DNA from: Obrimoposthia wandeli
Taxonomy: Eukaryota
Direction of reading: 5' to 3'
DNA length: 64,000 nt
NCBI GenBank assembly: GCA_977020255.1
Contig: CDROCS010000462.1
Location: forward strand, 1-64,000
Shown: in pieces, positions 4,487 to 20,033 of the stretch
Position numbering within the stretch: the first letter of the stretch is position 1
Layout of the letters: every line of letters begins with the position of its first letter
Program-made: the position numbers and the translations under genes
Notes under the pieces: model-generated
What the model was told of the DNA's origin: nothing
What the model saw: the letters and a program-made list of their open reading frames with translations, nothing else
The model's database searches: none

Positions 4487-5748
4487 GATATTCCTCGTTT
4501 ATGCTGTGCTTTATTTTGATACATACGCTTGTCTGCCAGAATATAGCAGCGCTGAGAATCCCCATCACTTTCACTAAAACTGGCGAAGCCTATACTGACT
4601 GAAATAGGATAGTCTAATATCATCGACATTCTGTGTTCTACATCTGCTAGTTGGTTTTTAATCCGCAGGTTGCTCTCCTGTGTCGCCTTGTGCAGCACTA
4701 GCGCAAACTCATCGCCACCCAAGCGAAAGGCGTTATCACCAACGCGACCGAGTTTGGCCAATTCCGTGGCAAATAAGCGCAGTAAACTGTCACCTTTAGG
4801 ATGGCCGAACTTATCATTATACGCTTTGAAATCATTGAGATCTAAAATCCCAATACTGCAATCCTCATTTTCCCTGACATAGCTCTGAGCCGTACTTTCA
4901 CAAACCTCTTCAAAATAACTACGGTTGCGCAATTTGGTCAAACTATCAGTACTGGCCAGTTCAACGGCGCTTTGTAGTTCGCCTTGTGCATGACTTAACA
5001 ACAGGCGCGAGGACACAACTAAAGAGGCCAGTTTTATAACATCCTCCATATACTTGTAATCGACATCGCTGCTGTCGTGCAGACACATTATATGACCGAT
5101 CGGAGCTTGATCTTGACCGTAGTAAACCAGTCCAGCGTAGGATTTCGCTCCTATCTCTGCAAGGAATAAATTTTTGGGAAAAGAGACGGCAACGTCAGTA
5201 AATAGAGTAAATTTTTTATTGCGCGCCATCACCTCACAAGGAGAATCAGGCAACGTGTAACGGCTCGCGGGGTGTAAGGCGTTAGTATTCCAGAAAGAAA
5301 TAACTTCGACCGTTTGCCGATCGAGAAAACGGGTGACAAAAATCCAACGCCATCCAGTAATATCAGCAATCGCCTCAACTATAGCGTCGAACAATTCTTC
5401 ACTGTAATTAATACGCTGCAGCATTTTACCGAGTAAACCGTCGCTGTGATTGGGTTTCGCCACAGGCGAATCTATATACAGCACACGACCTTCACTTAAA
5501 ACGACACAGCGAATGCTGTAGCCATCAAGATAACTATCTTCATCACAATTAAGTAATTTAGTTTGCAGTGCATGCGTTAAAAGATGGTAGCTAGCGTTGT
5601 TGTAGATAGGCGTGTTTTGCCCATCTAGGATTAATACAGCGCTAGCATAATTATCCAGTAACTGATGAAAATCTGCATTGCTAATGTTCAACGATAACTC
5701 CACTGGCAGCAGAGCTGCCATCACTCGATAGGGTGGTAAACAAGACAT
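4483..5748 (-). CDS. Diguanylate cyclase with GAF-like sensory region
   Basis: DSLTKLRNR, DLNDFKAYNDKFGH, RLGGDEF; I-site RVGD. Confidence 0.9.
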   Translation of the reverse strand: MSCLPPYRVMAALLPVELSLNISNADFHQLLDNYASAVLILDGQNTPIYNNASYHLLTHALQTKLLNCDEDSYLDGYSIRCVVLSEGRVLYIDSPVAKPNHSDGLLGKMLQRINYSEELFDAIVEAIADITGWRWIFVTRFLDRQTVEVISFWNTNALHPASRYTLPDSPCEVMARNKKFTLFTDVAVSFPKNLFLAEIGAKSYAGLVYYGQDQAPIGHIMCLHDSSDVDYKYMEDVIKLASLVVSSRLLLSHAQGELQSAVELASTDSLTKLRNRSYFEEVCESTAQSYVRENEDCSIGILDLNDFKAYNDKFGHPKGDSLLRLFATELAKLGRVGDNAFRLGGDEFALVLHKATQESNLRIKNQLADVEHRMSMILDYPISVSIGFASFSESDGDSQRCYILADKRMYQNKAQHKRGIS

Positions 5749-5870
5749 TAACTTCTGTTAAGTGCCTTATCCAACCTAGACTGTATCTAGAAGTACGTCA
5801 AACGCAAAGCGAATATTACCAAAGACCTATTAATTAATTGATATTGTTAAAAAATAATTTCACCGCTTGT

Positions 5871-6638
5871 TTAAAAGCGTAGTGACAAACAGCTTAAGCC
5901 ACCGTCTACTTTTTGAAACTCGCTAACATCGACTTCAATCACTTGGTAACCCGCTCGCTCAATAATCGCTTTCGTTTTAGGAAAGCCTTTTGGGGTCAAT
6001 ACTTTATCATTTATCCAAACGCTATTCGCCGCATATGCTTCACTCGCGTCTACTTCAAGTAGATTATATTTACTAAATTCACTTTTGCTTAAAAACTCAC
6101 CGCAGGCAAGTAGGTTGTTACCCTCAAGGTAGCCCAACCCCGTCTTTAAGTGCAGTACCTCACTCATGGTTACCACTGAACCTGTCATGCCATATTTTTC
6201 AAGTATAGCGATCATTTGTCGCGCACCTTCACTGTTCGTACGCTCTGACAAGCCGATATAGTAATGGTCTTCTACCATCATAATATCACCTGCTTCCACC
6301 GTACCTGGATGCTCTATCGCTTCAACTTGCTGATAAAACTGTTCGACTACTGGGCGCATCGCCAGCGTCTCTGCAGTGCGAGAACTCGCCCCTGGGTTGG
6401 TGATGATGGCACAGTGTGGTGTCATTAACGCGGCATCTTCAACAAAGGTTGAATCGGGAAAGTTTTCATCTGCCGCCAGTTCTGTCACTTCCAGTCCACA
6501 GGCCTTCAGCGCCGCAACATAGTTGCTGTGTTGCGCGAGAGCGTTTTGGTAATTTGGTACGCCTAAGTCAGCGCTGGTAATTCCAGAAACGATAGCTTCA
6601 CATGGCTTTTTAACAATTGCTTTAGTAAACATAGACAC
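5871..6638 (-). CDS. ddaH: Dimethylarginine dimethylaminohydrolase (amidinotransferase superfamily)
   Basis: FPDSTFVED, HLKT and C-terminal KVDGGLSCLSLRF carry the catalytic Asp/His/Cys. Confidence 0.9.
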   Translation of the reverse strand: MSMFTKAIVKKPCEAIVSGITSADLGVPNYQNALAQHSNYVAALKACGLEVTELAADENFPDSTFVEDAALMTPHCAIITNPGASSRTAETLAMRPVVEQFYQQVEAIEHPGTVEAGDIMMVEDHYYIGLSERTNSEGARQMIAILEKYGMTGSVVTMSEVLHLKTGLGYLEGNNLLACGEFLSKSEFSKYNLLEVDASEAYAANSVWINDKVLTPKGFPKTKAIIERAGYQVIEVDVSEFQKVDGGLSCLSLRF

Positions 6639-6720
6639 CCTCTAATACAGTTTAAGCTGGCACTACTCACAGTGCGAATAACTGGATAATGCCTTTTTAA
6701 TTTTCGTATTTCCAGCTTTA

Positions 6721-6736
6721 TTTTACAAGTGTACAA
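6721..6736. promoter_or_regulatory. Putative TetR operator 1 (TTTTACA-AG-TGTACAA) upstream of ddaH
   Basis: Imperfect palindrome matching the sites at 10059 and 12159. Confidence 0.55.
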
Positions 6737-6786
6737 CAATTTATTGAAATGCCCCTAAAGCGTAGACCCTAGATAAGTTATCCCTG

Positions 6787-7428
6787 CTAACTTTGCTCAA
6801 CCAACCCCTCGATCATCAGCACAGACTGCACCGAGCGCAGCCCTATCTCTGCCAGTTCCCCCTCTTCAAACAACTCCATTGCCAAACAGCCCTCAAGCCA
6901 AAGCCCATCGAGTAGTGCATTCACCATAATGCCGTAACGCTCTAGTTCTTTAGTGGTGACTTGACGCCCTAACTCTTTAAAAACCGATGCGACCAAGTCT
7001 TGGCAACCCATGCGAAACTCCAAGTAAGATTCGTGATGAATCTTAGCCATTGACGGTGTAGAGCGAGTTAAGCTGGTAAAAGAGGCCCACAATTGATGAT
7101 AGCGGCTGTTCATCACTCCACCTTGCAGGGACGTGTTGATAAAGTGGCGCAGTTTTTCGATAGCGCTAGTATTTATATCCTCCAAGCCATCCCTTGCACC
7201 TAGGAACATATCGTCCATGGTCTGGCGATAAGCGGCACAGATCAGCGTTTCTTTATCGGGAAAATAATGTCTCACTAACCCCGGAGTTACCCCTGCAACA
7301 TCGGCAATTCGGCGAATGCTAGCCTCGCCAATTCCACCGCGTTCGACACAGATTTGCGTGGCAATAATGAGATCTTTTCGACGCTTTTCTTCTGATTCTC
7401 TGCTGTAAGACTTTCTCGAACTATTCAT
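6787..7428 (-). CDS. TetR family regulator, BetI-like
   Basis: N-terminal HTH IRRIADVAGVTPGLVRHYF; C-terminal ALLDGLWLE typical of the BetI subgroup. Confidence 0.88.
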   Translation of the reverse strand: MNSSRKSYSRESEEKRRKDLIIATQICVERGGIGEASIRRIADVAGVTPGLVRHYFPDKETLICAAYRQTMDDMFLGARDGLEDINTSAIEKLRHFINTSLQGGVMNSRYHQLWASFTSLTRSTPSMAKIHHESYLEFRMGCQDLVASVFKELGRQVTTKELERYGIMVNALLDGLWLEGCLAMELFEEGELAEIGLRSVQSVLMIEGLVEQS

Positions 7429-7836
7429 ATTTTCATCTTAGGATGGCTAGCTTTGGGGCATCCTAACACGCCTATATGTTTTGTAAATAAAGTGCTTGCT
7501 GGCACGACACTGTTATCACTTCGCTATTTTAAAGAAGAGCACAATTCATTCCTTTCCTATAACACTCGTTTCGCTTTATTTACCTGCATAAATACTCCAG
7601 TGGATAACTTACGTATTCGAATATTAGTCTCTATATTTAGCTAGGGCTGTTCTCTAAAAAACATATCGAGCGATAGTGGAAAGAAGGCATAAGTCGACAA
7701 CGTAGCAAGTCCGTGTGACTATTTTAAATAGGGGTTTTGGTGCATATCATTTTGGGACAGCCATTAACCGAAGCTTCAAGGCTGCCTTTTGGGTTTATGG
7801 ATAGGATAATATCGGTATCTTGGGAGCCAATATTAA

Positions 7837-7870
7837 TCTAGCGCATAACAGTTATTTATGATGCGCTAGA
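7837..7870. terminator. Hairpin downstream of the deacylase gene
   Basis: Perfect 10-bp inverted repeat tctagcgcat / atgcgctaga. Confidence 0.45.
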
Positions 7871-7900
7871 CACCTTTCGCGCCATGAATAGAGCAGTATA

Positions 7901-8899
7901 TTAGAAGCCACGGCGTGGAGATACTAGCTCAAATAGGCAGTCCCCTCGCTGGGTAGGTGCCATTGCCCGCTGGCAAATTACAATGCCGGCACTAGCAGAA
8001 AAGATCTCGATCACTTTAGATAACGGTGTTTCTGGCTGATAAATACACCCCATTAATTGGTCCTCCTCAACCCAGTCCCCCAGAGCGACTTGTGGCTCAA
8101 ATAAACCTTCTGTATAAGAAAAAATTTGCTGTTCAGACGAACTCGTCACGTATTGAGTGGCGATGGGTACCTCAAATTGACTAGGATAGTTGCATAAATT
8201 AACACTGGCGAAAAAACGTAATAGCGAGCTTTGGAATTGCTTTCTATAATCGCGATTCACTCGCCCTGCACCACCGAGTTCGACTGTCACGGCACACGCA
8301 CCTTGACGATAAGCTGCCGAGGTCGCAAACCAACCTTGATTATCGCCGTCAAATAGTAATGTGTGGGGTAATGCTAAACTTTCCAGCATCCCTTGTAACC
8401 GCGTTTGGTGTTCTTTCGTTCCCTCTTTATTTGCCATCGCCAGCGGTAAATAGTCAAGTGACTGGCCTCCGGAGTGGATATCAATAAAGTAATCAGCATC
8501 CGCCAATAGTACCGTTTCAATGTAATTGGCCATCACAGCGGTGGTTGTGCCTTGTGGATCACCTGGGAATATTCGGTTCAAATTGAGCTGATCTAAAGGT
8601 GAGGTACGTTGTCTAGCCATCGCTGCTGCGAAGTTGGCCATCGGCAGCAAGATCAGTTGCCCTTGAATATCAGCAGCTTCCACAGCGCTGATCAATTGCT
8701 GGACAATAATCTGGCCTTCGTACTCATCGCCGTGATTACCAGCCATGACGACGATTTTAGGACCTTGGCCACGTTTTATACTGACCACGGGAACTGGCAG
8801 CCAACCGTAAGCTGAACGTGACACTGAATGAGATAAACGAATATAGCCGCAGTGTTTTCCCTCTTTACTAAAATCTACTTCGCTGCTGATAAAAGACAC
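7901..8899 (-). CDS. Succinylglutamate desuccinylase/aspartoacylase (M14, DoeB-like) deacylase
   Basis: GNHGDEYEG, NLNRIFPG, DIHSGG, VELGG; GTG start with GAGGAG RBS. Confidence 0.85.
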   Translation of the reverse strand: MSFISSEVDFSKEGKHCGYIRLSHSVSRSAYGWLPVPVVSIKRGQGPKIVVMAGNHGDEYEGQIIVQQLISAVEAADIQGQLILLPMANFAAAMARQRTSPLDQLNLNRIFPGDPQGTTTAVMANYIETVLLADADYFIDIHSGGQSLDYLPLAMANKEGTKEHQTRLQGMLESLALPHTLLFDGDNQGWFATSAAYRQGACAVTVELGGAGRVNRDYRKQFQSSLLRFFASVNLCNYPSQFEVPIATQYVTSSSEQQIFSYTEGLFEPQVALGDWVEEDQLMGCIYQPETPLSKVIEIFSASAGIVICQRAMAPTQRGDCLFELVSPRRGF

Positions 8900-8917
8900 A
8901 GTAACTCCTCTATTTTA

Positions 8918-9946
8918 TTAAATTTTAATGGCTGCGATAAATCCAGCGACGTCCTGTTCTTTGGTCGCCCAGCTGGTTACTAATCGGTAGCAATCGTTCC
9001 CTTCAACTGGCCAGTGATACAACACATAACCTTGCTCTTTTGCTTGAAGCCACTGCTGGTTACTCAAAGAAATGAACAATTGATTAGTTTGCGCGGGAAA
9101 ATAACAAGTACCCAAATTTTTCTCTGCCACTTGATCAGCCACTAATGCCGCCATGCGATTGGCGTGATGTGCGTTTTTTAGCCACAATTCATTTTCGAAA
9201 TACCCCAGTAATTGGGCCGATAGAAATCTCATTTTTGATGCTAGGTGACCGGTTTGTTTAGCATGCGCGCGGATACCCGAAGCCAAAGCCGGGTCAAAAA
9301 CCACCAGCGCTTCTGCACCAAAAGTGCCATTTTTGCTCGCACCAAAAGTCATTGCATCTACCCCACAACGCCAACTAAGATCAGCGGGGTGACAATCATA
9401 ATGGGCGACTGCATTGGCAAATCTAGCGCCATCAACAAAGTATTTTAATTGATATTGGCGACAAATTTCGCCCAATTCACTCATCTGTTCACTGCTATAG
9501 CAACGGCCATATTCTGTCGCTTGAGTAATCGCTAACGCGGCAGGAGCTGGGCTATGAATATCATTGGTATCAAGTGATTGTAAATAACCTTCAAGCAATT
9601 TTTTATCAATACGGTCTAGATCAGTACCCAGTGTTGCCAGCCTAGCACCGCCGGTAAACAACTGAGGTGCTGTACTTTCGGAAAGGGCTAAATGACTATT
9701 TGAATGGCAAATAATACTTTGTCGTCCATGACACATCTGCCCAAGTGCCAGGCAATTCGCGGCGGTTCCCGTCAACACCGGAAAAACATAAACTTGCTGA
9801 CCAAAAACAGCCGAGACGCAATCATTGAGTTTGGCAGTTAACGCGTCATCGCCATAGGGTAAATCGTAGCCATGTTGCGCATGCTGCTCAACATACTGCC
9901 AAATTTCTGGGCTTGCTGGTGCAGTATTGTCCGATAAAAACATCAT
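8918..9946 (-). CDS. Low-specificity threonine aldolase family PLP enzyme
   Basis: FLSDNT, PYGDD, TGTAAN, VDGARFANA, FGASKNG (PLP lysine); start moved to ATG 9946 behind AAGGA. Confidence 0.85.
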   Translation of the reverse strand: MMFLSDNTAPASPEIWQYVEQHAQHGYDLPYGDDALTAKLNDCVSAVFGQQVYVFPVLTGTAANCLALGQMCHGRQSIICHSNSHLALSESTAPQLFTGGARLATLGTDLDRIDKKLLEGYLQSLDTNDIHSPAPAALAITQATEYGRCYSSEQMSELGEICRQYQLKYFVDGARFANAVAHYDCHPADLSWRCGVDAMTFGASKNGTFGAEALVVFDPALASGIRAHAKQTGHLASKMRFLSAQLLGYFENELWLKNAHHANRMAALVADQVAEKNLGTCYFPAQTNQLFISLSNQQWLQAKEQGYVLYHWPVEGNDCYRLVTSWATKEQDVAGFIAAIKI

Positions 9947-10058
9947 TCCATCCTTAGTCATTCTTCTTATGGTTATCAATATGAGTGGACACATTATCTA
10001 AATATAAAAAATCGTTCAATGTTGTTGATCATTGATTGGTTTCACCATAATATATTTG

Positions 10059-10074
10059 TTATACAAATGAATAA
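10059..10074. promoter_or_regulatory. Putative TetR operator 2 (TTATACA-AA-TGAATAA) in the aldolase/dioxygenase divergent promoter
   Basis: ttgttatacaaatga is shared exactly with 12156-12170; lies just after a cataat -10-like box at 10046-10051. Confidence 0.65.
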
Positions 10075-10091
10075 CAAGGGAGATTTAGCTG

Positions 10092-11222
10092 ATGATAATG
10101 AAAACTGCAACCGCCTCATCTGAAGGCTTGATCGTCAATTGGGCTGACGGAAGTGAAAAAACCTTCCCCTGGCTTTGGATTATGGATCACGGTGAAGACC
10201 AAAAAAGCGTGAATCACAAAACATTACAAAGAAACGTTGATACATTCGCTCTCAATCAAACCTTGAGAGGAGAGCATGTGACGTTGCTTGACCAAGAGCA
10301 GCAAATTAGCATTAGCTGGAACAATGGCGAACAAACGACTATTTCTTGTTTACGACTCGCACAGGTTGTCGCTAAAGCACGAGATGACGATCAACTATCC
10401 CTAGCGACTGACAAAGTGCTCTGGCAACAAGATAGCATGCTCAGTGACATACCCAGTATCGGCTATCAAGAAATCGTCGCGGGTGACCAAGGCGTGCTTA
10501 ACTGGTTAAACCAAATTGATCGATACGGATTCTGTTTGGTAACGGATACGCAAGCAACCGAGCAAGGAACCATTGATTTAGCAGAGCGCCTTGCTCCAGC
10601 CCAACGCACTATTTTTGGTACTTATTGGCCATTATCTTCCGATATTAAACATCACGACGATACGGCTTATACTACTCAGTTTTTATCACCCCATACCGAT
10701 GCGTCCTATCACAGCAATGCACCGGGGTTACAGATGTTCAATTGCCTAGTGTTTGATGGCCAAGGAGGTGAAAGCATTGTCGTAGACGGTTTCGCTATTG
10801 CTAAAAAAATTCATCAAGAGCGACCAGATCTTTACCAAATACTCTGTGAGGTGAATGTCCCTGGGCATTATAAAGAGCCCAATGTCCACTTATCGGCCCA
10901 GCGTCCAGCTATTCGGCACGATCGTCACGGCGATCTTGAGCAAGTTACCTTCAATAATTATGACCGCTCAGCATTTTTATTACCGGATGCACAACAAACA
11001 CTGTTTTACGAGGCGTACGCAGAGTTCAATCGCCACAGTATGGATCAAGCCAATTGGATTAAAATTCCTCTACGACCCGGTATGGCCCTTATTTTTGACA
11101 ACTGGCGCTGCCTACACGGAAGGATGTCCTATTCGGGAAAACGTAATTTCTATGGCTGCTATCATGACCATGCAGAATACCAAAGCAGGGTACGCACCTT
11201 ACAAAAGACACTTTCCTCTTAA
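10092..11222 (+). CDS. Fe(II)/2-oxoglutarate dioxygenase, trimethyllysine dioxygenase / gamma-butyrobetaine hydroxylase-like (TauD family)
   Basis: HTD iron motif, WRCLHGR, N-terminal WIMDH..KTLQR region resembling TMLD. Confidence 0.85.
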   Translation: MIMKTATASSEGLIVNWADGSEKTFPWLWIMDHGEDQKSVNHKTLQRNVDTFALNQTLRGEHVTLLDQEQQISISWNNGEQTTISCLRLAQVVAKARDDDQLSLATDKVLWQQDSMLSDIPSIGYQEIVAGDQGVLNWLNQIDRYGFCLVTDTQATEQGTIDLAERLAPAQRTIFGTYWPLSSDIKHHDDTAYTTQFLSPHTDASYHSNAPGLQMFNCLVFDGQGGESIVVDGFAIAKKIHQERPDLYQILCEVNVPGHYKEPNVHLSAQRPAIRHDRHGDLEQVTFNNYDRSAFLLPDAQQTLFYEAYAEFNRHSMDQANWIKIPLRPGMALIFDNWRCLHGRMSYSGKRNFYGCYHDHAEYQSRVRTLQKTLSS

Positions 11223-11260
11223 AAAGGAAGCGATCTAAAAAGTAATCCAAATTAGTTTCA

Positions 11261-11296
11261 AAATACCCCTTATCACTCGTCGAGTGAGGGGTATTT
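11261..11296. terminator. Hairpin between convergent genes
   Basis: aaatacccct..tcactcg / cgagtga.ggggtattt nested inverted repeat. Confidence 0.6.
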
Positions 11297-11446
11297 AATG
11301 ACTCTGGCTACCTAGTAAGATCGCTCAAACAGTACTATTTCTATCAAGTTCACACGAGCTAAGTTGAATATTCAAAGCGTATTTCATGTTATAAAAGGAC
11401 AGTAATATCTGATTACAAAACACTACCACCTTAATTTTCAGGCCTC

Positions 11447-12076
11447 TTATAAGCTCTCTAACCCTAACATTGACTGCACTGAAGAAACGCCAAGTTCTAT
11501 CAATTCGTCATGTTCAAAAAGCTCTATCGCCATACAACCTTCAACCCACAGACCATCAATTAGCGCGTTAACGGCAATGGCATACCTTTCGATTTGTCGA
11601 TTATCTAGCTCTCGCCCGCACTCGATAAGCACCTCTCGTATCAATACCTCACAGCTATTGCGAAACTCTAGGTAGGCTTCACGATGAATTTCTGCAATTT
11701 CAGGCACCGCAGTCATCAAACTGGTAAATGATGCCCACAACTGGTGGTTTCGCGGTTGCATGACAGGAGGTTTCAACGAGGTTTCAATGAAGAACCGCAA
11801 CTTGGCAGAAGGGGTTAATTCACTATAACCCAACGTCTGTTTTGCCTGTTGAGTCATGGTAGACATGGTCGCTTGATAAGCGGCGCGAAGGAGTGACACT
11901 TTATCGGGAAAATAGTGGCGTACTAAGCCCGGAGTAACACCGGCAATATCGGCTACTTTACGGATTGTCGCAGCACCTATGCCACCTTCTATTATGCATT
12001 CTTGGGTTGCAGCAATTAAATCGCCGCGTCTCTCTGCTTCGCTAGCGCGGCGAAATGATCGTCGTGGGGTCGTCAT
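11447..12076 (-). CDS. TetR family regulator, BetI-like (paralog of 6787-7428)
   Basis: HTH IRKVADIAGVTPGLVRHYF; ALIDGLWVE. Confidence 0.88.
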   Translation of the reverse strand: MTTPRRSFRRASEAERRGDLIAATQECIIEGGIGAATIRKVADIAGVTPGLVRHYFPDKVSLLRAAYQATMSTMTQQAKQTLGYSELTPSAKLRFFIETSLKPPVMQPRNHQLWASFTSLMTAVPEIAEIHREAYLEFRNSCEVLIREVLIECGRELDNRQIERYAIAVNALIDGLWVEGCMAIELFEHDELIELGVSSVQSMLGLESL

Positions 12077-12158
12077 AGTATCGGGATTCCAGCAATAGTC
12101 GACACACTCTACTCGGTTTTAATAGCTTCACCAAATTTATCAACATAACTATTGCTTG

Positions 12159-12174
12159 TTATACAAATGAGTAA
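12159..12174. promoter_or_regulatory. Putative TetR operator 3 (TTATACA-AA-TGAGTAA) in the tetR/ABC divergent promoter
   Basis: 15 of 16 positions identical to the site at 10059. Confidence 0.65.
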
Positions 12175-12206
12175 TAGTATCGAGCGATAACTTTCGAGGT
12201 AAAGCT

Positions 12207-13016
12207 ATGCTGGCAAGCGACAATAAAAAACAAATATTTGCCAATTCAACCACCCGCGAAGAGGCGATTAGCATCCGTGGTTTGAGAAAATCATTTGGTG
12301 GTATTGAAGTATTAAAAGGCGTTGATTTAACTGCAAAACAAGGCGACATCATCGCCATTATAGGTGGTAGTGGTTCCGGAAAATCTACCCTGCTACGCTG
12401 CATCAATCTACTGGAAATCCCCTCGGCAGGCGAGGTCGCTATCAATGGCGAAGTCATCCGCATGAAGCAAACCAAAGAAGGTCCAAAACCCGCCGACAAA
12501 CAGCAAGTTAAACGACTCAGATCAAAATTAGCCATGGTTTTCCAGAGTTTTAACTTGTGGCAACATATGACGCTGCTGGAGAATCTAATTGCCGCTCCCA
12601 CTATCGTGCATGGCACCGATAAAAACACTGCTACCCAGCTGGCGAAGCAGTTATTAAAGCGAGTAGGACTTAGCGATAAAGAACAAAGTTACCCCGCATT
12701 CTTATCCGGTGGTCAGCAGCAGCGTGTTGCGATCGCCAGAGCCGTTGCCGTCCAACCCAGTGTCATGCTATTTGATGAGCCCACCTCAGCACTAGACCCC
12801 GAACTCGTTGGAGAAGTCCTCAAGGTCATTGAAGATTTGGCGAATGAAGGTCGCACCATGATATTGGTGACACATGAGATGAAATTTGCCCGTGAAGTTG
12901 CTAGCCACGTAGTCTTTCTTTATCAAGGAGTAATTGAAGAAGAGGGCCCTGCTGAGCAAATATTTAATAGGCCAAAATCAGAACGTTTGAAACAATTTAT
13001 CAGTTCAGTTCAATAA
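12207..13016 (+). CDS. Polar amino-acid ABC transporter ATPase (HisP-like)
   Basis: GGSGSGKST, LSGGQQQR, FDEPTSALDPE, VTHEM. Confidence 0.92.
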   Translation: MLASDNKKQIFANSTTREEAISIRGLRKSFGGIEVLKGVDLTAKQGDIIAIIGGSGSGKSTLLRCINLLEIPSAGEVAINGEVIRMKQTKEGPKPADKQQVKRLRSKLAMVFQSFNLWQHMTLLENLIAAPTIVHGTDKNTATQLAKQLLKRVGLSDKEQSYPAFLSGGQQQRVAIARAVAVQPSVMLFDEPTSALDPELVGEVLKVIEDLANEGRTMILVTHEMKFAREVASHVVFLYQGVIEEEGPAEQIFNRPKSERLKQFISSVQ

Positions 13017-13056
13017 GCGCTGTAAACACCGTTTTACCATTAGGAGATAATAACAA

Positions 13057-13839
13057 ATGAAGATTCTAAATAAACACGCCATCGCCGGCGCCTTGATGGC
13101 GATAGTCGCAGCACCCTCTGCATTCGCCGATGTTGTAAAGGTCGGCATTGCTGCTGAGCCCTATCCTCCCTTCGCCTCAACAGATGTCTCTGGTAAATGG
13201 CAAGGCTGGGAAATCGATATGATTGGCGCTATTTGTGAGACGGCTAAGCTCGATTGCAAAATTACTCCCATCGCTTGGGATGGCATTATACCCGCACTAA
13301 ACAGTAAAAAAATTGACGTGGTTATGGCATCATTATCCATTACCCCCGATCGTCTTAAAGTTATCGACTTCTCTGACAAATACTACAACACTCCCGCTGT
13401 CATTATTGGCGACAAGAATGTTGATATTGGTGTTACCGCCGACAGCATGAAAGGCAAAATCCTCGGTGTGCAAAGTGGTACTATCCACCGTAAATATGTA
13501 CTAAAACACTTTGCTGATGCCGCCGATAGCATCAAAGAATACCAAACTCAAGATGAGGCAAATCAAGATTTAGTTGCCGGTCGTATTGACGCTTTACAAG
13601 CCGACTCTCTCGCCATGATGGATTTTGTAAATTCAGAGCAAGGTAAAATGTGCTGTGAAATTAAAGGCGAAGTCGCCGCTGATTTAGATGTCCTAGGCCC
13701 AGGTGTTGGCGCGGGTATGCGCAAAGGTGAGGACGCTTTGAAAACCGCTATAAATGGCGCGATCAAAACCTTACGCGACAACGGTAAATACATGGAAATT
13801 TCTAAAAAGTACTTCAGCTTTGACCCATACGGAAGCTAA
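13057..13839 (+). CDS. Polar amino-acid ABC substrate-binding protein (HisJ/ArgT-like)
   Basis: Signal peptide ending AFA; EPYPPF, AWDGIIPAL, SLSITPDR. Confidence 0.9.
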   Translation: MKILNKHAIAGALMAIVAAPSAFADVVKVGIAAEPYPPFASTDVSGKWQGWEIDMIGAICETAKLDCKITPIAWDGIIPALNSKKIDVVMASLSITPDRLKVIDFSDKYYNTPAVIIGDKNVDIGVTADSMKGKILGVQSGTIHRKYVLKHFADAADSIKEYQTQDEANQDLVAGRIDALQADSLAMMDFVNSEQGKMCCEIKGEVAADLDVLGPGVGAGMRKGEDALKTAINGAIKTLRDNGKYMEISKKYFSFDPYGS

Positions 13840-13854
13840 CGTATTCAAAAATAG

Positions 13855-13873
13855 CGACCTAGCCACTAGGTCG
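13855..13873 (+). terminator. Intercistronic hairpin after the SBP gene
   Basis: cgacctag-cca-ctaggtcg followed by tcatttt. Confidence 0.5.
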
Positions 13874-13926
13874 TCATTTTGAGCTTTATTTACGCCTAGC
13901 ACCTTATTATCACTTATTGATCCCTC

Positions 13927-14676
13927 TTGGGAGAGTCCATTTTGGATAGCATAGCTTCGTTTTTCGACAGTTTACAACTACTCGCGCTAACGCCTCCCGG
14001 CTGGGGTGGGAATTTATTGAGGGGTTTACTACACTCCTTAGAAATCGCCTTAGGTGGATATTCTCTCGGCCTGATTATTGGTGTTTTAGGTGCTTGCGGA
14101 AAACTCTATGCTGGCGTATTTACACGAGACACTCTCTCTTGCTACACCACATTAGTACGTGCGGTACCTGAACTCATTCTCATTTTGTTGTTCTACTATG
14201 CCGGTACTGACTTGATCAACCAATTGATGTTTTTACTCGGTAGAGATGCAGTCGATATCAATGGTTTAGTAGCCGGCATCTTCGTTATTGGCTTAGTCCA
14301 AGGCGCCTACGCCACTGAAGTGATCCGCGGTGCGATATTAGCGGTACCAAAAGGGCAAATTGAAGCGGCCACAGCTTACGGATTTTCGTTTTGGCAGACC
14401 ATGCGTCGTATCACACTACCCGCCATGCTCCCTTACGCGATCCCCGGTCTGGCAAATCTTTGGTTGATCGCAACGAAAGATACAGCCTTATTAGCCGTTG
14501 TCGGTTTTAGTGAACTCACCTTAGAAACCAAACAAGCAGCCGGTTCAACCAAACACTACATGTTATTTTACTGTGCCGCTGGCGTGCTGTATTTGATGGT
14601 CACGTTAATGTCTAATCAGCTAATTCAGCGCATTGAAAAATGGTCGAGACGTGGGTTTTCGCAGGAGCGAACATAA
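13927..14676 (+). CDS. Polar amino-acid ABC permease (HisQ-like)
   Basis: RAVPELIL, GAYATEVIRGA, GQIEAATAYG; TTG start uncertain. Confidence 0.88.
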   Translation: MGESILDSIASFFDSLQLLALTPPGWGGNLLRGLLHSLEIALGGYSLGLIIGVLGACGKLYAGVFTRDTLSCYTTLVRAVPELILILLFYYAGTDLINQLMFLLGRDAVDINGLVAGIFVIGLVQGAYATEVIRGAILAVPKGQIEAATAYGFSFWQTMRRITLPAMLPYAIPGLANLWLIATKDTALLAVVGFSELTLETKQAAGSTKHYMLFYCAAGVLYLMVTLMSNQLIQRIEKWSRRGFSQERT

Positions 14677-15449
14677 TGATCACTGCTCAGCCATTTTGGA
14701 GTCCACATCGATTTATTCTCGCCGGTATTGGTATTGCGATTGTTACCAGCTGCGCTATTTTCATGCGCTGGGACTGGCTACCCGACTACTACGAGATCAT
14801 ATTAGAAGGTATCTGGCGAACCATTTGGCTGTTAATTGCCAGTGTGACCATTGGCTTTGCCTTAGCCCTACCTATTGGTCTGGTCCAAGTAACTGGGCCT
14901 AAACCGCTCGCTATCTTAGCCCGTCAATTTTGCACTATTATTCGCGGCACTCCGCTGTTGTTACAATTGTGGTTACTCTACTACGGTTTAGGCTCGGTAT
15001 TCGCAACCATTCCGGAAATTCGCGGTTCAGCTATGTGGCCTTATCTGCGCCAAGCTTGGCCTTATGCCTTGCTATGTTTAACCCTGTCGTTTGCCGCTTA
15101 CGAAGCTGAAATTATGCGCGGTGCTTTCCTTGGTGTCCCTAAAGGCGAAATTGAAGCGGCGCGGGCGTTTGGCTTTAGTGAAACACAATTATTTCGTAAA
15201 GTTTGGCTACCTAGGGCCATCCAACGCGCGCTGCCAACACTGGGCGGCGAGGTCGTTCTACAACTCAAGGCAACACCACTGGTCGCTACCATTACCATGA
15301 TTGATGTTTACGGTGCCTTCTCAAAGGTTCGCCAAGACATATTTATTACTTATGAGCCATTACTGCTGCTCGCTTTGATATACATGATGATTGCCGGTTT
15401 ATTAGTAATGATATTCCGCTACTTGGAAAATCGGACTCCTACTCAATAA
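14676..15449 (+). CDS. Polar amino-acid ABC permease (HisM-like)
   Basis: IRGTPLLLQL, AAYEAEIMRG, GEIEAARAFG; start set at the TAATG overlap. Confidence 0.88.
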   Translation: MITAQPFWSPHRFILAGIGIAIVTSCAIFMRWDWLPDYYEIILEGIWRTIWLLIASVTIGFALALPIGLVQVTGPKPLAILARQFCTIIRGTPLLLQLWLLYYGLGSVFATIPEIRGSAMWPYLRQAWPYALLCLTLSFAAYEAEIMRGAFLGVPKGEIEAARAFGFSETQLFRKVWLPRAIQRALPTLGGEVVLQLKATPLVATITMIDVYGAFSKVRQDIFITYEPLLLLALIYMMIAGLLVMIFRYLENRTPTQ

Positions 15450-15497
15450 CTTATTATCATTAGCTCACTGGCACCGGCTTTCTCCGATAACAACGAG

Positions 15498-15526
15498 AAG
15501 AGCTGTAATATTTATTTACAGCTCTT
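15498..15526 (+). terminator. Hairpin ending the ABC operon
   Basis: aagagctgtaa / ttacagctctt 11-bp stem. Confidence 0.6.
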
Positions 15527-15840
15527 TCGGTTTCAAACTGTCAGCTGTTAATTGGCGCCATCAACGGTAGCTATTTTCATGTAGGTTAAGCTCTATTCTT
15601 CGATAACGCCACAAACCTTCAATCGATCCTATTCAATACTACGATCTGCAATTTTTTACTCTATATTTTTTACATGGGCCGAAGTTATTACTATGCATGC
15701 CGTCTTCACAGCGGCTCAAGTCACCGGACTTTTTCCTATCATTAAGCACTGTCACTTCATGATTTATATGAAATTTGGCAAGAAATGTTTAGTATAGTTA
15801 ACGAAAGGTCTTTAACTCACATCCTATACAAGGCGCACCA

Positions 15841-16980
15841 ATGATACTCACCGTTTTCTTTTGTGGTACAGGCTCCAACAGTAATGACCATAATAATAAC
15901 GCATATTTCAACGGCGAATTAGTTTCTACTTTAGCCAAGAACCATAAGGGCCAAGAGTATCGCGATTACATAATTGTTGATGGTGTGGGTAGTCATAACC
16001 AGTCAGAATGGATGAAATTTAGCGATTGTAAAACTTACAATTTCATTCAAGGCACTCTCGGATTTGGCATAGAGAGCAATGTCGAACACGTTAAGAACAT
16101 TCTATTAGGTAACGTTAATAACATTGCGAACAGCACTTACAAAGATAGAGCCAGCGACATGTTAAGCGAGTCCAAGCCATTCTTTTTTAAAAATAAATGG
16201 AAGCGAGAAAGAGACGAATTAGCGGGTGATTTAAGTGCCCATATGAATCATCTGATGCAAAGAAATTCAGCATTTTCTGAGGTAACACAAGTTAATTTGA
16301 TCGGTTGGAGTCGAGGTGGAGTCACTTGTTTTGAGCTTGCGAATGCCATGGCAAACCATCCTCATCTCAAGAAAATTGAGGTAAATATCTTCGCACTAGA
16401 CCCCGTACCTGGCGGAGTCAATAAGTTTAAAACCATTAAGAATCTGCAATCCAACGTCAAAAACTTTGTCGCTATATACGCCGCAGATGAAAGATCGGTA
16501 GCTTTTACTGCTCTATTGCCCACCTTAAGTAATAGTACTGTTTCTTATACCACGACCATGCCTGGATCTCATGCCACGTTAGTTGGCAACGATGCCTGTC
16601 CGTCTTTCAAAAGGGCGAATTTAACCCGCGTAGGAAAAATAACCAGAGACTTTGCTGAAAAAGTACTTTCTCATTGGGGCGCCAGCTTCAAGCAACAATC
16701 TCATTATAGCGCTGAACAATTAAAGACTTTATATTTTCAAATTGGACTTCGTTTGGATGCATACGAATCAAGACAAAATCAGACCTATACCATTAAGCAG
16801 CTATTTGTTAACAGCGCAGATGATCGAGTACAAAATGGATCTGCTGCACAGTTATTACCTCAGTCAAAAAAAATAAATGACATTACTGTGATAAACAAAC
16901 ACCACGAGGATATATTGAAAAATAAACCTTTCGCTATCAATGGTAATATGAAGACGCTCACGAACCGCTGTCACTCATAA
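15841..16980 (+). CDS. Alpha/beta hydrolase resembling DUF2235/Tle1 lipase effectors; candidate T6SS effector
   Basis: FFCGTGSN, DGVGS, GWSRGG nucleophile elbow, ALDPVPG, ADER, PGSH; no signal peptide; AT-rich; next to PAAR. Confidence 0.6.
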   Translation: MILTVFFCGTGSNSNDHNNNAYFNGELVSTLAKNHKGQEYRDYIIVDGVGSHNQSEWMKFSDCKTYNFIQGTLGFGIESNVEHVKNILLGNVNNIANSTYKDRASDMLSESKPFFFKNKWKRERDELAGDLSAHMNHLMQRNSAFSEVTQVNLIGWSRGGVTCFELANAMANHPHLKKIEVNIFALDPVPGGVNKFKTIKNLQSNVKNFVAIYAADERSVAFTALLPTLSNSTVSYTTTMPGSHATLVGNDACPSFKRANLTRVGKITRDFAEKVLSHWGASFKQQSHYSAEQLKTLYFQIGLRLDAYESRQNQTYTIKQLFVNSADDRVQNGSAAQLLPQSKKINDITVINKHHEDILKNKPFAINGNMKTLTNRCHS

Positions 16981-17009
16981 ACCCTATCCACTGAAGGTCA
17001 AAGCTCTTT

Positions 17010-17309
17010 TTAGCCTCCTATCATCACTGTCGGGCAACCCAAAACAATAGAGCCTCCATGTGCGGTACTATCACCCATTCGCGCAGCTGGCTTGCCACCA
17101 ATCAATACGGTGGCGCTGCCTTTAACAATACTATCTGGTGGACCGACACAGACACACATATCCCCCACCCCTGCAGCGGGCATCTTACCGATCAGTACCG
17201 TCGGTGCGCCCGGGCCTACAATAGGGCCGCCGACGTGAGGAATAGGTACCACGGCTGGTGTCTGCATCGGGCAAACGTGCATATCTGTCAGGCGCGCTGC
17301 TAAAGTCAT
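17010..17309 (-). CDS. PAAR-repeat spike protein
   Basis: LAARLTD, MPAAGVGD, KPAARMGD with conserved His/Cys. Confidence 0.92.
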   Translation of the reverse strand: MTLAARLTDMHVCPMQTPAVVPIPHVGGPIVGPGAPTVLIGKMPAAGVGDMCVCVGPPDSIVKGSATVLIGGKPAARMGDSTAHGGSIVLGCPTVMIGG

Positions 17310-17899
17310 TTTTCAGCTCCTACAACCGTTTTTAATATCCCTTTACCACCATGAGCAAGATCTTCAGCTAGTGTACGGGCATCACGGTAGTACGCTTGGT
17401 AGCTTTGCCACTCAGGTTTTAATGCTGCAGTATTGATCGCTCCCGCCACCGCTTTAGCATAGAGATATGGTGCTGGTAATACTTCAGGTTGATCGGTGCC
17501 TGCGATACTGCCCGCGCCACTCCAAAATACCGCTTGTGCCAACCAGCCCATGGCACAGCTATGCCCTAACGTTTGCACACGTTGCTCTATCAATCGACGC
17601 TTGGTCTCCTCTGGCTCCAACACCCAATTTTTGCAGTGCAGCAGAGTATCACGCTCTAAATCACTCCAGTCGTCCCAGCGCAATTCCAGCACGATGGCAC
17701 ACCACCAAATAGATTCGCGCATTGGCAGTGCATGAGCAACATAATTAGTCAGGTCGATAAAATAAGCGGCATCGTACAATTGCCCTATCGTTTGCTCCGG
17801 AGTGTTTTGTCGATCTATCACCTCCTGCGCATCTTCTGAAGGTTCTATCCGCGACCAAATTACTTCACTACTGGAAAAAGGTATTTTTTTATAACTCAT
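17306..17899 (-). CDS. T6SS spike-associated protein (DUF6931-like)
   Basis: AHALPMRESIWWCA and AQAVFWSGAGSI motifs; coupled between vgrG and PAAR. Confidence 0.65.
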   Translation of the reverse strand: MSYKKIPFSSSEVIWSRIEPSEDAQEVIDRQNTPEQTIGQLYDAAYFIDLTNYVAHALPMRESIWWCAIVLELRWDDWSDLERDTLLHCKNWVLEPEETKRRLIEQRVQTLGHSCAMGWLAQAVFWSGAGSIAGTDQPEVLPAPYLYAKAVAGAINTAALKPEWQSYQAYYRDARTLAEDLAHGGKGILKTVVGAEK

Positions 17900-19920: not shown

Positions 19921-20033
19921 TATTAAACCTCTAAACTTATCTTTAGCTGATCTGTAGATGATTGGCTTAACGACAATGTATCCAATAGATTTCGCGCTGT
20001 AAAAACGTACTTTTATCACGCTTTATGGCCGAA

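What the first reader, a model, noticed from the sequence alone, without database searches (positions are those of the whole stretch)
5871..15449. Candidate regulon for scavenging post-translationally methylated Arg/Lys
Seen: DDAH, a TMLD-like 2OG dioxygenase, a PLP aldolase, an M14 deacylase, a HisJQMP-like ABC importer and two BetI-like TetRs lie within 10 kb and share an operator. Known: DDAH hydrolyses methylarginines, TMLD hydroxylates trimethyllysine, and both substrates come from turnover of methylated proteins. Inference: a unified bacterial pathway for methylated basic amino acids released from eukaryotic (algal or animal) protein.
Basis: partly seen in the sequence, partly recalled or inferred. 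Interest (0 to 1): 0.7.

Follow-up and report, generated by a model that had tools for sequence, protein, structure and literature searches.

The report
Regulon for methylated arginine and lysine
A marine bacterium keeps an importer, a methylarginine hydrolase and a trimethyllysine-hydroxylase-like enzyme with its aldolase under one conserved repressor-binding site, which looks like an undescribed bacterial route for feeding on the methylated amino acids released when methylated proteins break down.

Summary
All ten genes are at the stated coordinates. A 22-bp palindrome (TTGTTATACA-NN-TGTATAACAA) occurs three times in the 64-kb window, against 0.07 expected. The three copies lie upstream of DDAH, between the aldolase and the dioxygenase, and between TetR2 and the ABC genes.

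The operator is conserved in every orthologous locus examined. In two complete 5.2-Mb relatives its only three genome-wide copies sit in front of the dioxygenase, DDAH and ABC genes. In another relative DDAH is unlinked yet keeps the operator. The same gene set recurs around dioxygenases only 52% identical in other bacteria, one of them Microbaculum marinum.

- **DDAH:** about 65% identical to the solved Pseudomonas aeruginosa enzyme, with all catalytic and substrate-binding residues kept.
- **Dioxygenase:** keeps the iron triad, the aromatic cage and the aspartate that distinguishes trimethyllysine hydroxylase from butyrobetaine hydroxylase.
- **Aldolase:** a threonine/phenylserine-aldolase type.

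My reading is a repressor-controlled uptake and catabolic system for side-chain-methylated basic amino acids. The DDAH branch is secure. The substrate of the dioxygenase/aldolase branch is unproven: trimethyllysine is most likely, a methylarginine such as SDMA is possible. The deacylase role is open. I found no paper describing this system. It is a new bacterial variant of known chemistry.

The parts
5871..6638 (-). DDAH (dimethylarginine dimethylaminohydrolase); likely true start is the ATG at 6632
   Evidence: NF045658, 389.5 bits, full length. About 65% identical over the full length to P. aeruginosa DDAH 3RHY/1H70 (331 bits), with Cys249, His162, Glu114, Asp66, Arg85 and Arg132 equivalents kept. 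The RBS and ATG are seen.
6718..6739 (.). Operator copy upstream of DDAH (TetR1-type variant, TTATTTTACAAGTGTACAACAA)
   Evidence: 3 mismatches to the palindromic consensus. The same variant lies upstream of the TetR1-linked DDAH in L016, L028 and L037.
6787..7428 (-). TetR1, a BetI-like TetR repressor that travels with DDAH
   Evidence: PF13977 plus PF00440. 56% identical to TetR2 with an identical recognition helix. Its orthologues always sit next to DDAH.
7901..8899 (-). AstE/AspA-family (DoeB-like) N-acyl-amino-acid deacylase
   Evidence: PF24827, 135 bits. TIGR02994 at 204 bits, below the 402.7 cut-off. Nearest structures are 3NA6 and DoeB 6TWL.
8918..9994 (-). PLP-dependent L-threonine/phenylserine-aldolase-type enzyme
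   Evidence: PF01212, 148 bits. 264 bits to L-threonine aldolase 7YVR and 238 bits to the 1V72 aldolase. An aldolase is adjacent to the dioxygenase in L011, L028, L030, L031 and the distant L046.
10056..10077 (.). Operator copy in the divergent aldolase/dioxygenase promoter region (TTGTTATACAAATGAATAACAA)
   Evidence: 1 mismatch to the consensus. Conserved at the same place in every orthologous locus. It overlaps a -35-like hexamer of a promoter-like site on the aldolase strand.
10092..11222 (+). TMLD/BBOX-family Fe(II)/2-oxoglutarate dioxygenase
   Evidence: PF02668, 148 bits. TIGR02410 (TMLD) 256 bits, above BBOX at 228 and TmpA at 223. His201/Asp203/His342, Arg351, cage Phe175/Trp179/Tyr193/Tyr357, and Asp190 at the BBOX Asn191 / TMLH Asp231 position.
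11447..12076 (-). TetR2, a BetI-like TetR repressor divergent from the ABC operon
   Evidence: PF13977, 61.5 bits, plus PF00440. Syntenic in all orthologous loci.
12156..12177 (.). Operator copy in the divergent TetR2/ABC promoter region (TTGTTATACAAATGAGTAATAG)
   Evidence: First 15 bases identical to the 10056 site. The left half is exact in seven of the loci scanned.
12207..13016 (+). ABC ATPase (HisP-like)
   Evidence: NF007908, 341 bits; PF00005.
13057..13839 (+). Periplasmic binding protein, LAO/HisJ class
   Evidence: TIGR01096, 213 bits. 150 bits to HisJ 1HSL. Backbone binders Ser70, Ser72, Arg77 and Asp161 are kept. The side-chain pocket is changed to Glu11, Trp52, Ala69, Gln117, Ile121 and His122.
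13927..14676 (+). ABC permease (HisQ-like)
   Evidence: NF011714, 186 bits.
14640..15449 (+). ABC permease (HisM-like); the real start is probably later than 14640
   Evidence: NF011651, 147 bits. The L011 orthologue is called as 257 aa.

Best explanation
This is a repressor-controlled uptake and catabolic regulon for free basic amino acids whose side-chain nitrogen is methylated.

**Regulation (inferred from the operator and family membership).** In the absence of ligand, the BetI-like TetR dimers sit on a 22-bp palindrome. That palindrome overlaps the promoters of three units: the ABC importer with TetR2, the divergent deacylase-aldolase and dioxygenase genes, and DDAH.

**Uptake (inferred).** The LAO/HisJ-type binding protein keeps its amino-acid backbone clamp. 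Its side-chain pocket is remodelled to be more aromatic and hydrophobic. It is expected to deliver methylated cationic amino acids to the importer.

**Branch 1, well supported by homology.** DDAH hydrolyses asymmetric dimethylarginine and monomethylarginine to citrulline plus di- or monomethylamine.

**Branch 2, chemistry inferred from family and gene pairing.** The TMLD-like dioxygenase hydroxylates C3 of an amino acid held by its alpha-ammonium (Asp190) and by a methylated cationic head group in an aromatic cage. The threonine-aldolase-type enzyme then splits the 3-hydroxy amino acid into glycine and an aldehyde. With trimethyllysine this gives 4-trimethylaminobutanal, the precursor of gamma-butyrobetaine. 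That is the first half of the eukaryotic carnitine pathway, used here for catabolism.

**Substrate odds for branch 2.** Trimethyllysine about 0.45, a methylarginine such as SDMA about 0.3, another methylated or quaternary amino acid for the remainder.

**Deacylase (inferred, weak).** The DoeB-like deacylase probably frees the amino acid from an N-alpha-acylated form.
For: Regulon:
- Three operator copies occur in 64 kb against 0.07 expected.
- The operator is conserved in every orthologous locus examined.
- In the complete genomes G008 and G009 the only three sites with 3 or fewer mismatches are those before the dioxygenase/aldolase, DDAH and ABC genes. The reversed-pattern control found none.
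- In G186 the unlinked DDAH carries the operator about 130 bp upstream.
- Among 190 family genomes, 8 have the dioxygenase and 9 have the DDAH clade; 7 have both.
- Distant loci repeat the set. L040 has TetR, dioxygenase, DDAH-like and SBP. L042 has DDAH-like, TetR, dioxygenase, AstE-like and SBP.

DDAH: about 65% identity to solved PaDDAH with the catalytic triad and ligand-binding residues kept.

Dioxygenase:
- Iron triad, 2OG arginine and aromatic cage are present.
- Asp190 sits at the position that separates TMLH (Asp231) from BBOX (Asn191) (PMC7764450).
- This Asp is invariant in the clade and absent from the BBOX-like paralogue.
- By my recollection of the literature, the characterised relatives that matched (BBOX, TmpA, DfmD) and TMLH all act on trimethylammonium compounds.

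Aldolase: threonine/phenylserine-aldolase type. It is paired with the dioxygenase even at 48% dioxygenase identity in L046.

Hints of downstream quaternary-amine metabolism:
- A BBOX-like gene (395 bits) and a GbdR-like regulator lie next to the aldolase in G189.
- 3 to 6 BBOX-family paralogues are present per genome.
- An MTTB gene lies in L049 and a BCCT gene in L043.

Class-wide handling has a eukaryotic precedent: SLC25A45 binds dimethylarginine and trimethyllysine but not Arg or Lys.

Each branch can also stand alone, which fits parallel rather than sequential action. G183 has DDAH, TetR1 and an ABC without a dioxygenase hit. L041 and G184 have the dioxygenase, TetR and an ABC with no DDAH found (in L041 none in the locus; in G184 none in the MAG at 1e-40).
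Against: - No experiment bears on any substrate.
- Three curated equivalog cut-offs are missed: DDAH 389.5 against 450, TMLD 256 against 268, DoeB 204 against 403.
- No aldehyde dehydrogenase for 4-trimethylaminobutanal lies in the cluster.
- The binding proteins of the DDAH-only module and of the dioxygenase module have the same predicted pocket. In G008, G009 and G186 the only importer found in the cluster or behind the operator must feed DDAH. The importer therefore certainly sees methylarginines, while trimethyllysine uptake is only assumed.
- In G191 an operator copy precedes a 5-guanidino-2-oxopentanoate-decarboxylase-like gene and an aminotransferase, which points to guanidino substrates.
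- Agmatinase-family genes lie near two distant homologues.
- The deacylase has no obvious place in the scheme.
Confidence: 0.6

Rival explanations
1. A methylarginine-only regulon. The importer takes up ADMA, MMA and SDMA. DDAH deals with ADMA and MMA. The dioxygenase hydroxylates C3 of the methylarginine that DDAH cannot hydrolyse (SDMA), or of all of them. The aldolase then recovers glycine. No lysine derivative is involved.
For: - DDAH is the most constant partner of the dioxygenase and shares its operator.
- In L040 the DDAH-like gene follows the dioxygenase by 14 bp.
- The DDAH-linked and dioxygenase-linked binding proteins share their pocket residues.
- TetR1 and TetR2 have identical recognition helices and are 56% identical.
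- G191 puts an AruI-like decarboxylase (720 bits) and an aminotransferase behind an operator copy.
- Agmatinase-family genes lie near L043 and L049.
- From general knowledge, aromatic cages also read methylarginine in Tudor domains.
Against: - By my recollection, every characterised member of this dioxygenase clade acts on a trimethylammonium group; the matching members are listed.
- The best family model is TMLD.
- A BBOX-like gene and quaternary-amine genes neighbour the cluster in some genomes.
- The methylguanidino aldehyde produced would have no evident further route.
- The TPP enzymes near distant homologues belong to different subfamilies, so that link is weak.
Confidence: 0.25
2. The substrate is another cationic or quaternary amino acid of host or algal origin. 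Examples are an N-acetylated diamino acid, a shorter or longer trimethylated homologue, or a compatible-solute derivative. DDAH would be co-regulated for a different reason.
For: - The deacylase is DoeB-like, and AstE-like genes recur next to the dioxygenase in L029 and L042.
- The regulators are BetI-like.
- The ABC ATPase and permeases also score on the ectoine transporter models EhuA, EhuC and EhuD.
- These genomes hold many paralogues of the dioxygenase family, presumably with different substrates.
Against: - No other ectoine-catabolic enzyme was found in the cluster: none of the ten genes matches an ectoine-catabolic family other than DoeB, and the DoeB score is half its cut-off.
- The TMLH-type Asp and the LAO-type backbone clamp point to an L-alpha-amino acid with a long cationic side chain.
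- DDAH co-regulation is too conserved to be incidental.
Confidence: 0.1
3. The dioxygenase is an N-demethylase. It hydroxylates an N-methyl group, for example of SDMA or trimethyllysine, and releases formaldehyde. The product then feeds DDAH or ordinary catabolism.
For: A 2OG dioxygenase that hydroxylates the methyl group of methylguanidine has been described in halophilic bacteria (PMC12508155). This model would explain a sequential dioxygenase-then-DDAH operon order.
Against: - By my recollection, characterised members of the BBOX/TMLH/TmpA clade hydroxylate backbone carbons, not N-methyl groups (members listed).
- The conserved pairing with a threonine-aldolase-type enzyme fits a 3-hydroxy amino acid product.
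- The methylguanidine enzyme did not accept NMMA or ADMA.
Confidence: 0.04

Closest known systems
Eukaryotic carnitine biosynthesis, steps 1-2 (TMLH, then HTML aldolase)
   Same: A DUF971/TauD-clade dioxygenase with the iron triad, aromatic cage and the TMLH-specific Asp (PMC7764450). It sits next to a threonine-aldolase-family PLP enzyme, the family that supplies HTML aldolase activity in mouse according to my recollection of PMC11016064 (listed, not read here).
   Different: The system is bacterial, is coupled to an importer and a repressor, and so is catabolic or scavenging rather than biosynthetic. No TMABA dehydrogenase lies in the cluster. The substrate is untested. A 2021 paper states that the carnitine pathway had not been observed in prokaryotes (PMC8085414).
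Pseudomonas aeruginosa DDAH (PA1195; structures 1H70, 3RHY)
   Same: About 65% identity over the full length, with the catalytic Cys-His-Glu and the residues that hold the amino-acid moiety conserved.
   Different: By my recollection (not checked here), the P. aeruginosa gene is controlled by a sigma-54 activator, DdaR. Here control is by BetI-like TetR repressors and a palindromic operator shared with a dioxygenase and an ABC importer.
HisJQMP / LAO basic-amino-acid ABC importer
   Same: Same four-component architecture. The binding protein has conserved backbone-binding Ser70, Ser72, Arg77 and Asp161.
   Different: The side-chain pocket is changed: Asp11 to Glu, Leu/Phe52 to Trp, Ser69 to Ala, Leu117 to Gln, Thr121 to Ile, Gln122 to His. 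These residues are the same in all eleven relatives compared, eight dioxygenase-linked and three DDAH-linked. Curated cut-offs for HisJ, ArgT and ArtJ are far from met.
BetI, the choline-responsive TetR repressor
   Same: TetR_N plus the BetI-type C-terminal domain (PF13977), a divergent arrangement with a transporter operon, and a palindromic operator.
   Different: Scores of 84-85 bits against BetI cut-offs of 118 and 201. Different target genes. Two paralogues use related operator variants.
SLC25A45, mitochondrial carrier of methylated amino acids
   Same: It treats dimethylarginine and trimethyllysine as one class and excludes Arg and Lys (PMC12594208). This is the logic proposed for the bacterial importer and regulator.
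   Different: An unrelated protein family and organism. This is an analogy of function only.

Membership tests
DDAH (P. aeruginosa type, NF045658) | Full-length homology to a solved DDAH with the catalytic Cys249/His162/Glu114 | tested here: met
   331 bits, residues 3-255 against 1-254 of 3RHY. The motifs around Cys, His and Glu are conserved.
DDAH (P. aeruginosa type, NF045658) | Residues that bind the alpha-carboxylate and alpha-amine of the substrate (Arg85, Arg132, Asp66) | tested here: met
   All three are conserved in the alignment. The lid residue Leu18 is Ile.
DDAH (P. aeruginosa type, NF045658) | Score above the curated equivalog cut-off | tested here: not met
   389.5 bits against a cut-off of 450.
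Trimethyllysine dioxygenase (TIGR02410) | His-x-Asp...His iron triad and the 2OG-binding Arg | tested here: met
   His201, Asp203, His342 and Arg351 align with BBOX His202, Asp204, His347 and Arg360.
Trimethyllysine dioxygenase (TIGR02410) | Aromatic cage for the trimethylammonium group | tested here: met
   Phe175, Trp179, Tyr193 and Tyr357 align with BBOX Tyr177, Trp181, Tyr194 and Tyr366.
Trimethyllysine dioxygenase (TIGR02410) | Asp at the BBOX Asn191 position (TMLH Asp231), binding the alpha-ammonium | tested here: met
   Asp190 is invariant in 15 clade members and absent from the BBOX-like paralogue. The role of this residue is stated in PMC7764450.
Trimethyllysine dioxygenase (TIGR02410) | Score above the curated equivalog cut-off | tested here: not met
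   256.2 bits against 268.3. TMLD is still the best-scoring model, ahead of BBOX at 227.6 and TmpA at 223.3.
Trimethyllysine dioxygenase (TIGR02410) | Hydroxylation of trimethyllysine at C3 | not testable with these tools
   Needs an enzyme assay.
L-threonine aldolase family (PF01212) acting as a 3-hydroxy-amino-acid aldolase | Full-length homology to solved L-threonine or phenylserine aldolases | tested here: met
   264 bits to 7YVR and 238 bits to 1V72. PF01212 at 148 bits against a cut-off of 27.
L-threonine aldolase family (PF01212) acting as a 3-hydroxy-amino-acid aldolase | PLP-binding lysine and cleavage of the dioxygenase product | not tested
   The lysine position was not checked residue by residue. 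Activity needs an assay.
DoeB (N-acetyl-2,4-diaminobutyrate deacetylase, TIGR02994) | Score above the curated equivalog cut-off | tested here: not met
   204.4 bits against 402.7. The protein is a member of the wider AstE/AspA family only (PF24827, 135 bits).
BetI (choline repressor) | TetR_N plus TetR_C_6 domains | tested here: met
   Both TetRs pass the Pfam cut-offs.
BetI (choline repressor) | Equivalog score (NF001978 or TIGR03384) | tested here: not met
   82-85 bits against cut-offs of 118 and 201.
LAO/HisJ basic-amino-acid binding proteins (TIGR01096) | Backbone-clamp residues Ser70, Ser72, Arg77 and Asp161 | tested here: met
   Conserved in the window protein and in ten relatives.
LAO/HisJ basic-amino-acid binding proteins (TIGR01096) | Side-chain pocket of LAO/HisJ, and the curated cut-off | tested here: not met
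   Six pocket positions differ. The score is 213 bits against a cut-off of 256.

The most novel reading that the evidence does not exclude
These bacteria convert scavenged trimethyllysine, through 3-hydroxytrimethyllysine and 4-trimethylaminobutanal, into gamma-butyrobetaine and on to carnitine, using their BBOX-like paralogues. That would be a prokaryotic version of the whole carnitine pathway. It would be co-regulated with methylarginine hydrolysis by a repressor that senses methylated basic amino acids as a class.
Probability: 0.3. Interest if true: 0.8.

Novelty: new variant of a known kind. Interest (0 to 1): 0.62.

Why it matters
Methylated arginine and lysine are released whenever methylated proteins are degraded, and ordinary amino-acid pathways cannot use them. 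How bacteria consume them is barely known beyond DDAH in Pseudomonas.

This locus offers a defined and conserved gene set for study: an importer, two repressors, a 22-bp operator, a hydrolase, a hydroxylase, an aldolase and a deacylase. A cultured carrier with a complete genome, Aliamphritea hakodatensis, is available.

Work on it would show three things:
- whether bacteria possess a trimethyllysine hydroxylase and the first half of the carnitine route;
- which enzyme removes the DDAH-resistant methylarginine;
- whether methylated basic amino acids are sensed and transported as one class, as was recently found for a mitochondrial carrier.

It also bears on microbial production of butyrobetaine-type compounds and methylamines from host or algal protein.

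Tried and rejected
- **Chance juxtaposition of DDAH with a separate dioxygenase cluster.** Rejected by the operator evidence.
- **A TPP-dependent decarboxylase as a conserved pathway member.** TPP enzymes lie near seven dioxygenase homologues. They belong to different subfamilies: PoxB-like, PRK08199, indolepyruvate decarboxylase and ALS-like. Only G191 has the AruI type. I dropped this as general evidence.
- **Ectoine catabolism.** Only a half-score DoeB-like deacylase supports it.
- **A riboswitch or other RNA element in the cluster.** There is no Rfam hit in 5000-17000.
- **A phylum-wide sample for more contexts.** 0 of 400 further genomes carry the dioxygenase at 1e-90. This shows rarity but gave no loci.
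- **Sequencing runs.** One near-complete holder, probably the source sample, and coded names; no habitat or expression information.
- **Literature.** Nine full-text searches found no description of a bacterial trimethyllysine hydroxylase/aldolase cluster or of its link to DDAH. The library lacks most subscription journals.
- **The sigma-70 consensus scan.** It gave no more sites than shuffles, so promoter positions remain inferred.

Full report
**What is there.** The window is a bacterial contig (C462) inside a 1.35-Gb, 6912-contig assembly. Its closest public relatives are Oceanospirillaceae/Nitrincolaceae genomes and Aliamphritea hakodatensis.

- DDAH, 5871-6638(-);
- a BetI-like TetR (TetR1), 6787-7428(-);
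- an AstE/AspA-family, DoeB-like deacylase, 7901-8899(-);
- a threonine-aldolase-family PLP enzyme, 8918-9994(-);
- a TauD-family dioxygenase, 10092-11222(+), whose best model is trimethyllysine dioxygenase (256 bits, ahead of BBOX at 228 and TmpA at 223);
- a second BetI-like TetR (TetR2), 11447-12076(-);
- a HisP/J/Q/M-like ABC importer, 12207-15449(+).

No Rfam family matches in 5000-17000.

**The operator.** An identical 15-mer, extending to 18 of 19 bases, lies in the aldolase/dioxygenase gap (10056) and in the TetR2/ABC gap (12156).

Orthologous loci define the full site as a 22-bp palindrome, TTGTTATACA-NN-TGTATAACAA. The window has exactly three sites with 4 or fewer mismatches: 6718-6739, 10056-10077 and 12156-12177. 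It has none further at 5 mismatches. First-order Markov simulations give 0.07 per window, with a maximum of 1 in 60 runs.

The third site lies 48 bp after the TetR1 stop and about 100 bp before the DDAH start. TetR1 and TetR2 are 56% identical and share the same recognition helix.

Sites in front of TetR1-linked DDAH genes (window, L016, L028, L037) share a variant, TTATTTTACA..CGTACAAYAA. DDAH genes in genomes where I found only the TetR2 type carry sites nearer the main consensus. The two repressors therefore probably use related but not identical operators.

**Comparative evidence that this is one regulon.**
- *Close relatives.* Two further contigs of the same assembly and the MAG L011 keep the deacylase-aldolase / dioxygenase and TetR2 / ABC arrangement, without DDAH beside it.
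- *Other family members.* These place DDAH in different positions of the same neighbourhood. It follows the ABC genes in G189. It lies between the dioxygenase and TetR2 in G008, G009 and G002.
- *Separate DDAH module.* In G001, G191 and G183, DDAH and TetR1 sit beside a paralogous ABC importer elsewhere in the genome.
- *Genome-wide exclusivity.* In the complete 5.2-Mb genomes G008 and G009 the palindrome with 3 or fewer mismatches occurs only three times. The sites lie before the dioxygenase/aldolase, DDAH and ABC genes. The reversed-pattern control gives none.
- *Unlinked DDAH.* In G186, DDAH lies on another contig yet has the operator about 130 bp upstream.
- *Co-occurrence.* Of 190 genomes of the family, 8 have the dioxygenase and 9 have this DDAH clade; 7 have both. 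These genomes are related, so this is not an independent count.
- *Rarity.* The dioxygenase was found in 0 of 400 other genomes sampled across the phylum at 1e-90.
- *Distant loci.* Around dioxygenases only 52% identical the set reappears. One locus, from Microbaculum marinum, has TetR_C_6, dioxygenase, a DDAH-like gene 14 bp downstream, and SBP_bac_3. Another has DDAH-like, TetR_C_6, dioxygenase, AstE-like and an SBP_bac_3 ABC. An aldolase directly precedes a 48%-identical dioxygenase in a gammaproteobacterial MAG.

**The enzymes.**

*DDAH.* It is about 65% identical over its whole length to the solved P. aeruginosa enzyme. Cys249, His162 and Glu114 are kept, as are the residues that hold the amino-acid moiety: Asp66, Arg85 and Arg132. 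Hydrolysis of ADMA and MMA to citrulline is therefore a strong inference.

*Dioxygenase.* It aligns end to end with TmpA, human BBOX and DfmD.
- It has His201/Asp203/His342 and Arg351.
- Its cage residues are Phe175, Trp179, Tyr193 and Tyr357.
- It has Asp190 where BBOX has Asn191. A review attributes TMLH specificity to exactly this residue, Asp231, which binds the alpha-ammonium (PMC7764450).
- The Asp is invariant in 15 members of the clade and missing from a BBOX-like paralogue.

*Aldolase.* It is closest to solved L-threonine aldolases and to the 1V72 aldolase.

*Deacylase.* It is closest to DoeB-type N-acetyl-diaminobutyrate deacetylases, at half the equivalog score.

*Binding protein.* It keeps the LAO/HisJ backbone clamp (Ser70, Ser72, Arg77, Asp161). 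Its pocket has Glu11, Trp52, Ala69, Gln117, Ile121 and His122. These residues are identical in the dioxygenase-linked and the DDAH-linked paralogues.

**Most likely mechanism.** The TetR dimers repress three promoter regions until a methylated basic amino acid binds them. The importer then brings such amino acids in.

DDAH hydrolyses ADMA and MMA. The dioxygenase hydroxylates C3 of a methylated cationic amino acid, and the aldolase splits the product into glycine and an aldehyde.

Two branches acting in parallel fit better than one sequential pathway, because each module also occurs alone. G183 has DDAH, TetR1 and an ABC with no dioxygenase hit. L041 and G184 have the dioxygenase, TetR and an ABC with no DDAH found: none in the L041 locus, and none in the G184 MAG at 1e-40.

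Class-wide handling has a eukaryotic precedent. The carrier SLC25A45 binds dimethylarginine and trimethyllysine but not arginine or lysine (PMC12594208).

**Which substrate for the dioxygenase.**

Evidence for trimethyllysine:
- the clade's known chemistry (from my recollection of the literature), the best family model and the TMLH-type Asp;
- a BBOX-like gene (395 bits) and a GbdR-like regulator next to the aldolase in G189;
- 3 to 6 BBOX-family paralogues per genome;
- MTTB, BCCT and TMADH-like neighbours of distant homologues.

Evidence for a methylarginine such as SDMA:
- the tight, conserved coupling to DDAH;
- the shared pocket of the two binding-protein paralogues;
- in G008, G009 and G186 the only importer found in the cluster or behind the operator must supply DDAH;
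- an AruI-like decarboxylase and an aminotransferase lie behind an operator copy in G191;
- agmatinase-family neighbours in two distant loci.

I put trimethyllysine at about 0.45, a methylarginine at about 0.3, and other methylated amino acids at the rest.

An N-demethylase role has a loose precedent in methylguanidine hydroxylase (PMC12508155). It fits poorly with the conserved aldolase partner.

**What stays open.**
- The deacylase recurs next to the dioxygenase in G191 and L042, but its substrate is unknown. Release from an N-alpha-acylated form is only a guess.
- No aldehyde dehydrogenase is in the cluster.
- Three equivalog cut-offs are missed.
- Promoter positions are inferred.
- The eukaryotic origin of the substrates is plausible ecology, not evidence.

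**Novelty.** Nine full-text searches found no description of this system. A 2021 paper states that the carnitine pathway had not been seen in prokaryotes. The library misses most subscription journals, so prior description cannot be excluded.

All the enzymes belong to known families. What is new is their assembly into a conserved bacterial regulon. I rate it a new variant of a known kind.

Noticed in passing
G000 contigs C1089:174223-178350 (L002, L009) and C6832:33917-38035 (L003, L010): The same 1.35-Gb assembly holds two more copies of the cluster on other bacterial contigs, with dioxygenases 84% and 82% identical. At least three related Oceanospirillaceae-like strains were therefore co-assembled with the large genome.
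   Followed up: partly
window 7429-7900: A 472-bp gap between TetR1 and the deacylase has no ORF of 80 aa or more, no Rfam match and no operator copy. It contains a 17-nt inverted repeat (7474-7490 / 7650-7666). It may be the scar of the insertion that brought DDAH-TetR1 next to the cluster.
   Followed up: no
L029:10188-13079 (G191): An operator copy (13058-13079) precedes a 5-guanidino-2-oxopentanoate-decarboxylase-like gene (NF005712, 720 bits) and an aminotransferase, downstream of the deacylase. This may be a transamination/decarboxylation branch of the same regulon.
   Followed up: partly
L028:5833-8023 (G189): A gamma-butyrobetaine-dioxygenase-like gene (TIGR02409, 395 bits) and a GbdR-like AraC regulator lie directly beside the aldolase.
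   Followed up: partly
G001, G009, G186, G189, G191 (whole genomes): Each genome holds 3 to 6 paralogues of the BBOX/TMLD/TmpA dioxygenase family. This suggests broad catabolism of trimethylammonium compounds in this group.
   Followed up: no
L030:17010-17801 and L031:16915-17673 (G009, G008): A second DDAH paralogue, 57% identical, lies about 1 kb beyond the ABC genes, with no operator copy found at the thresholds used (6 or fewer mismatches in the locus scan, 3 or fewer genome-wide).
   Followed up: no
window 15841-20019: Immediately after the cluster come a 379-aa protein with no NCBIfam match and a type VI secretion VgrG (17899-20019). Other readers of this scan noted the adjoining T6SS region.
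   Followed up: no
window 10092-10100: The dioxygenase has two in-frame ATGs, at 10092 and 10098, after an AAGGGAG ribosome-binding site that overlaps the right end of the operator. The DDAH ORF call starts at a GTG (6638), but the homology and the RBS point to the ATG at 6632.
   Followed up: partly
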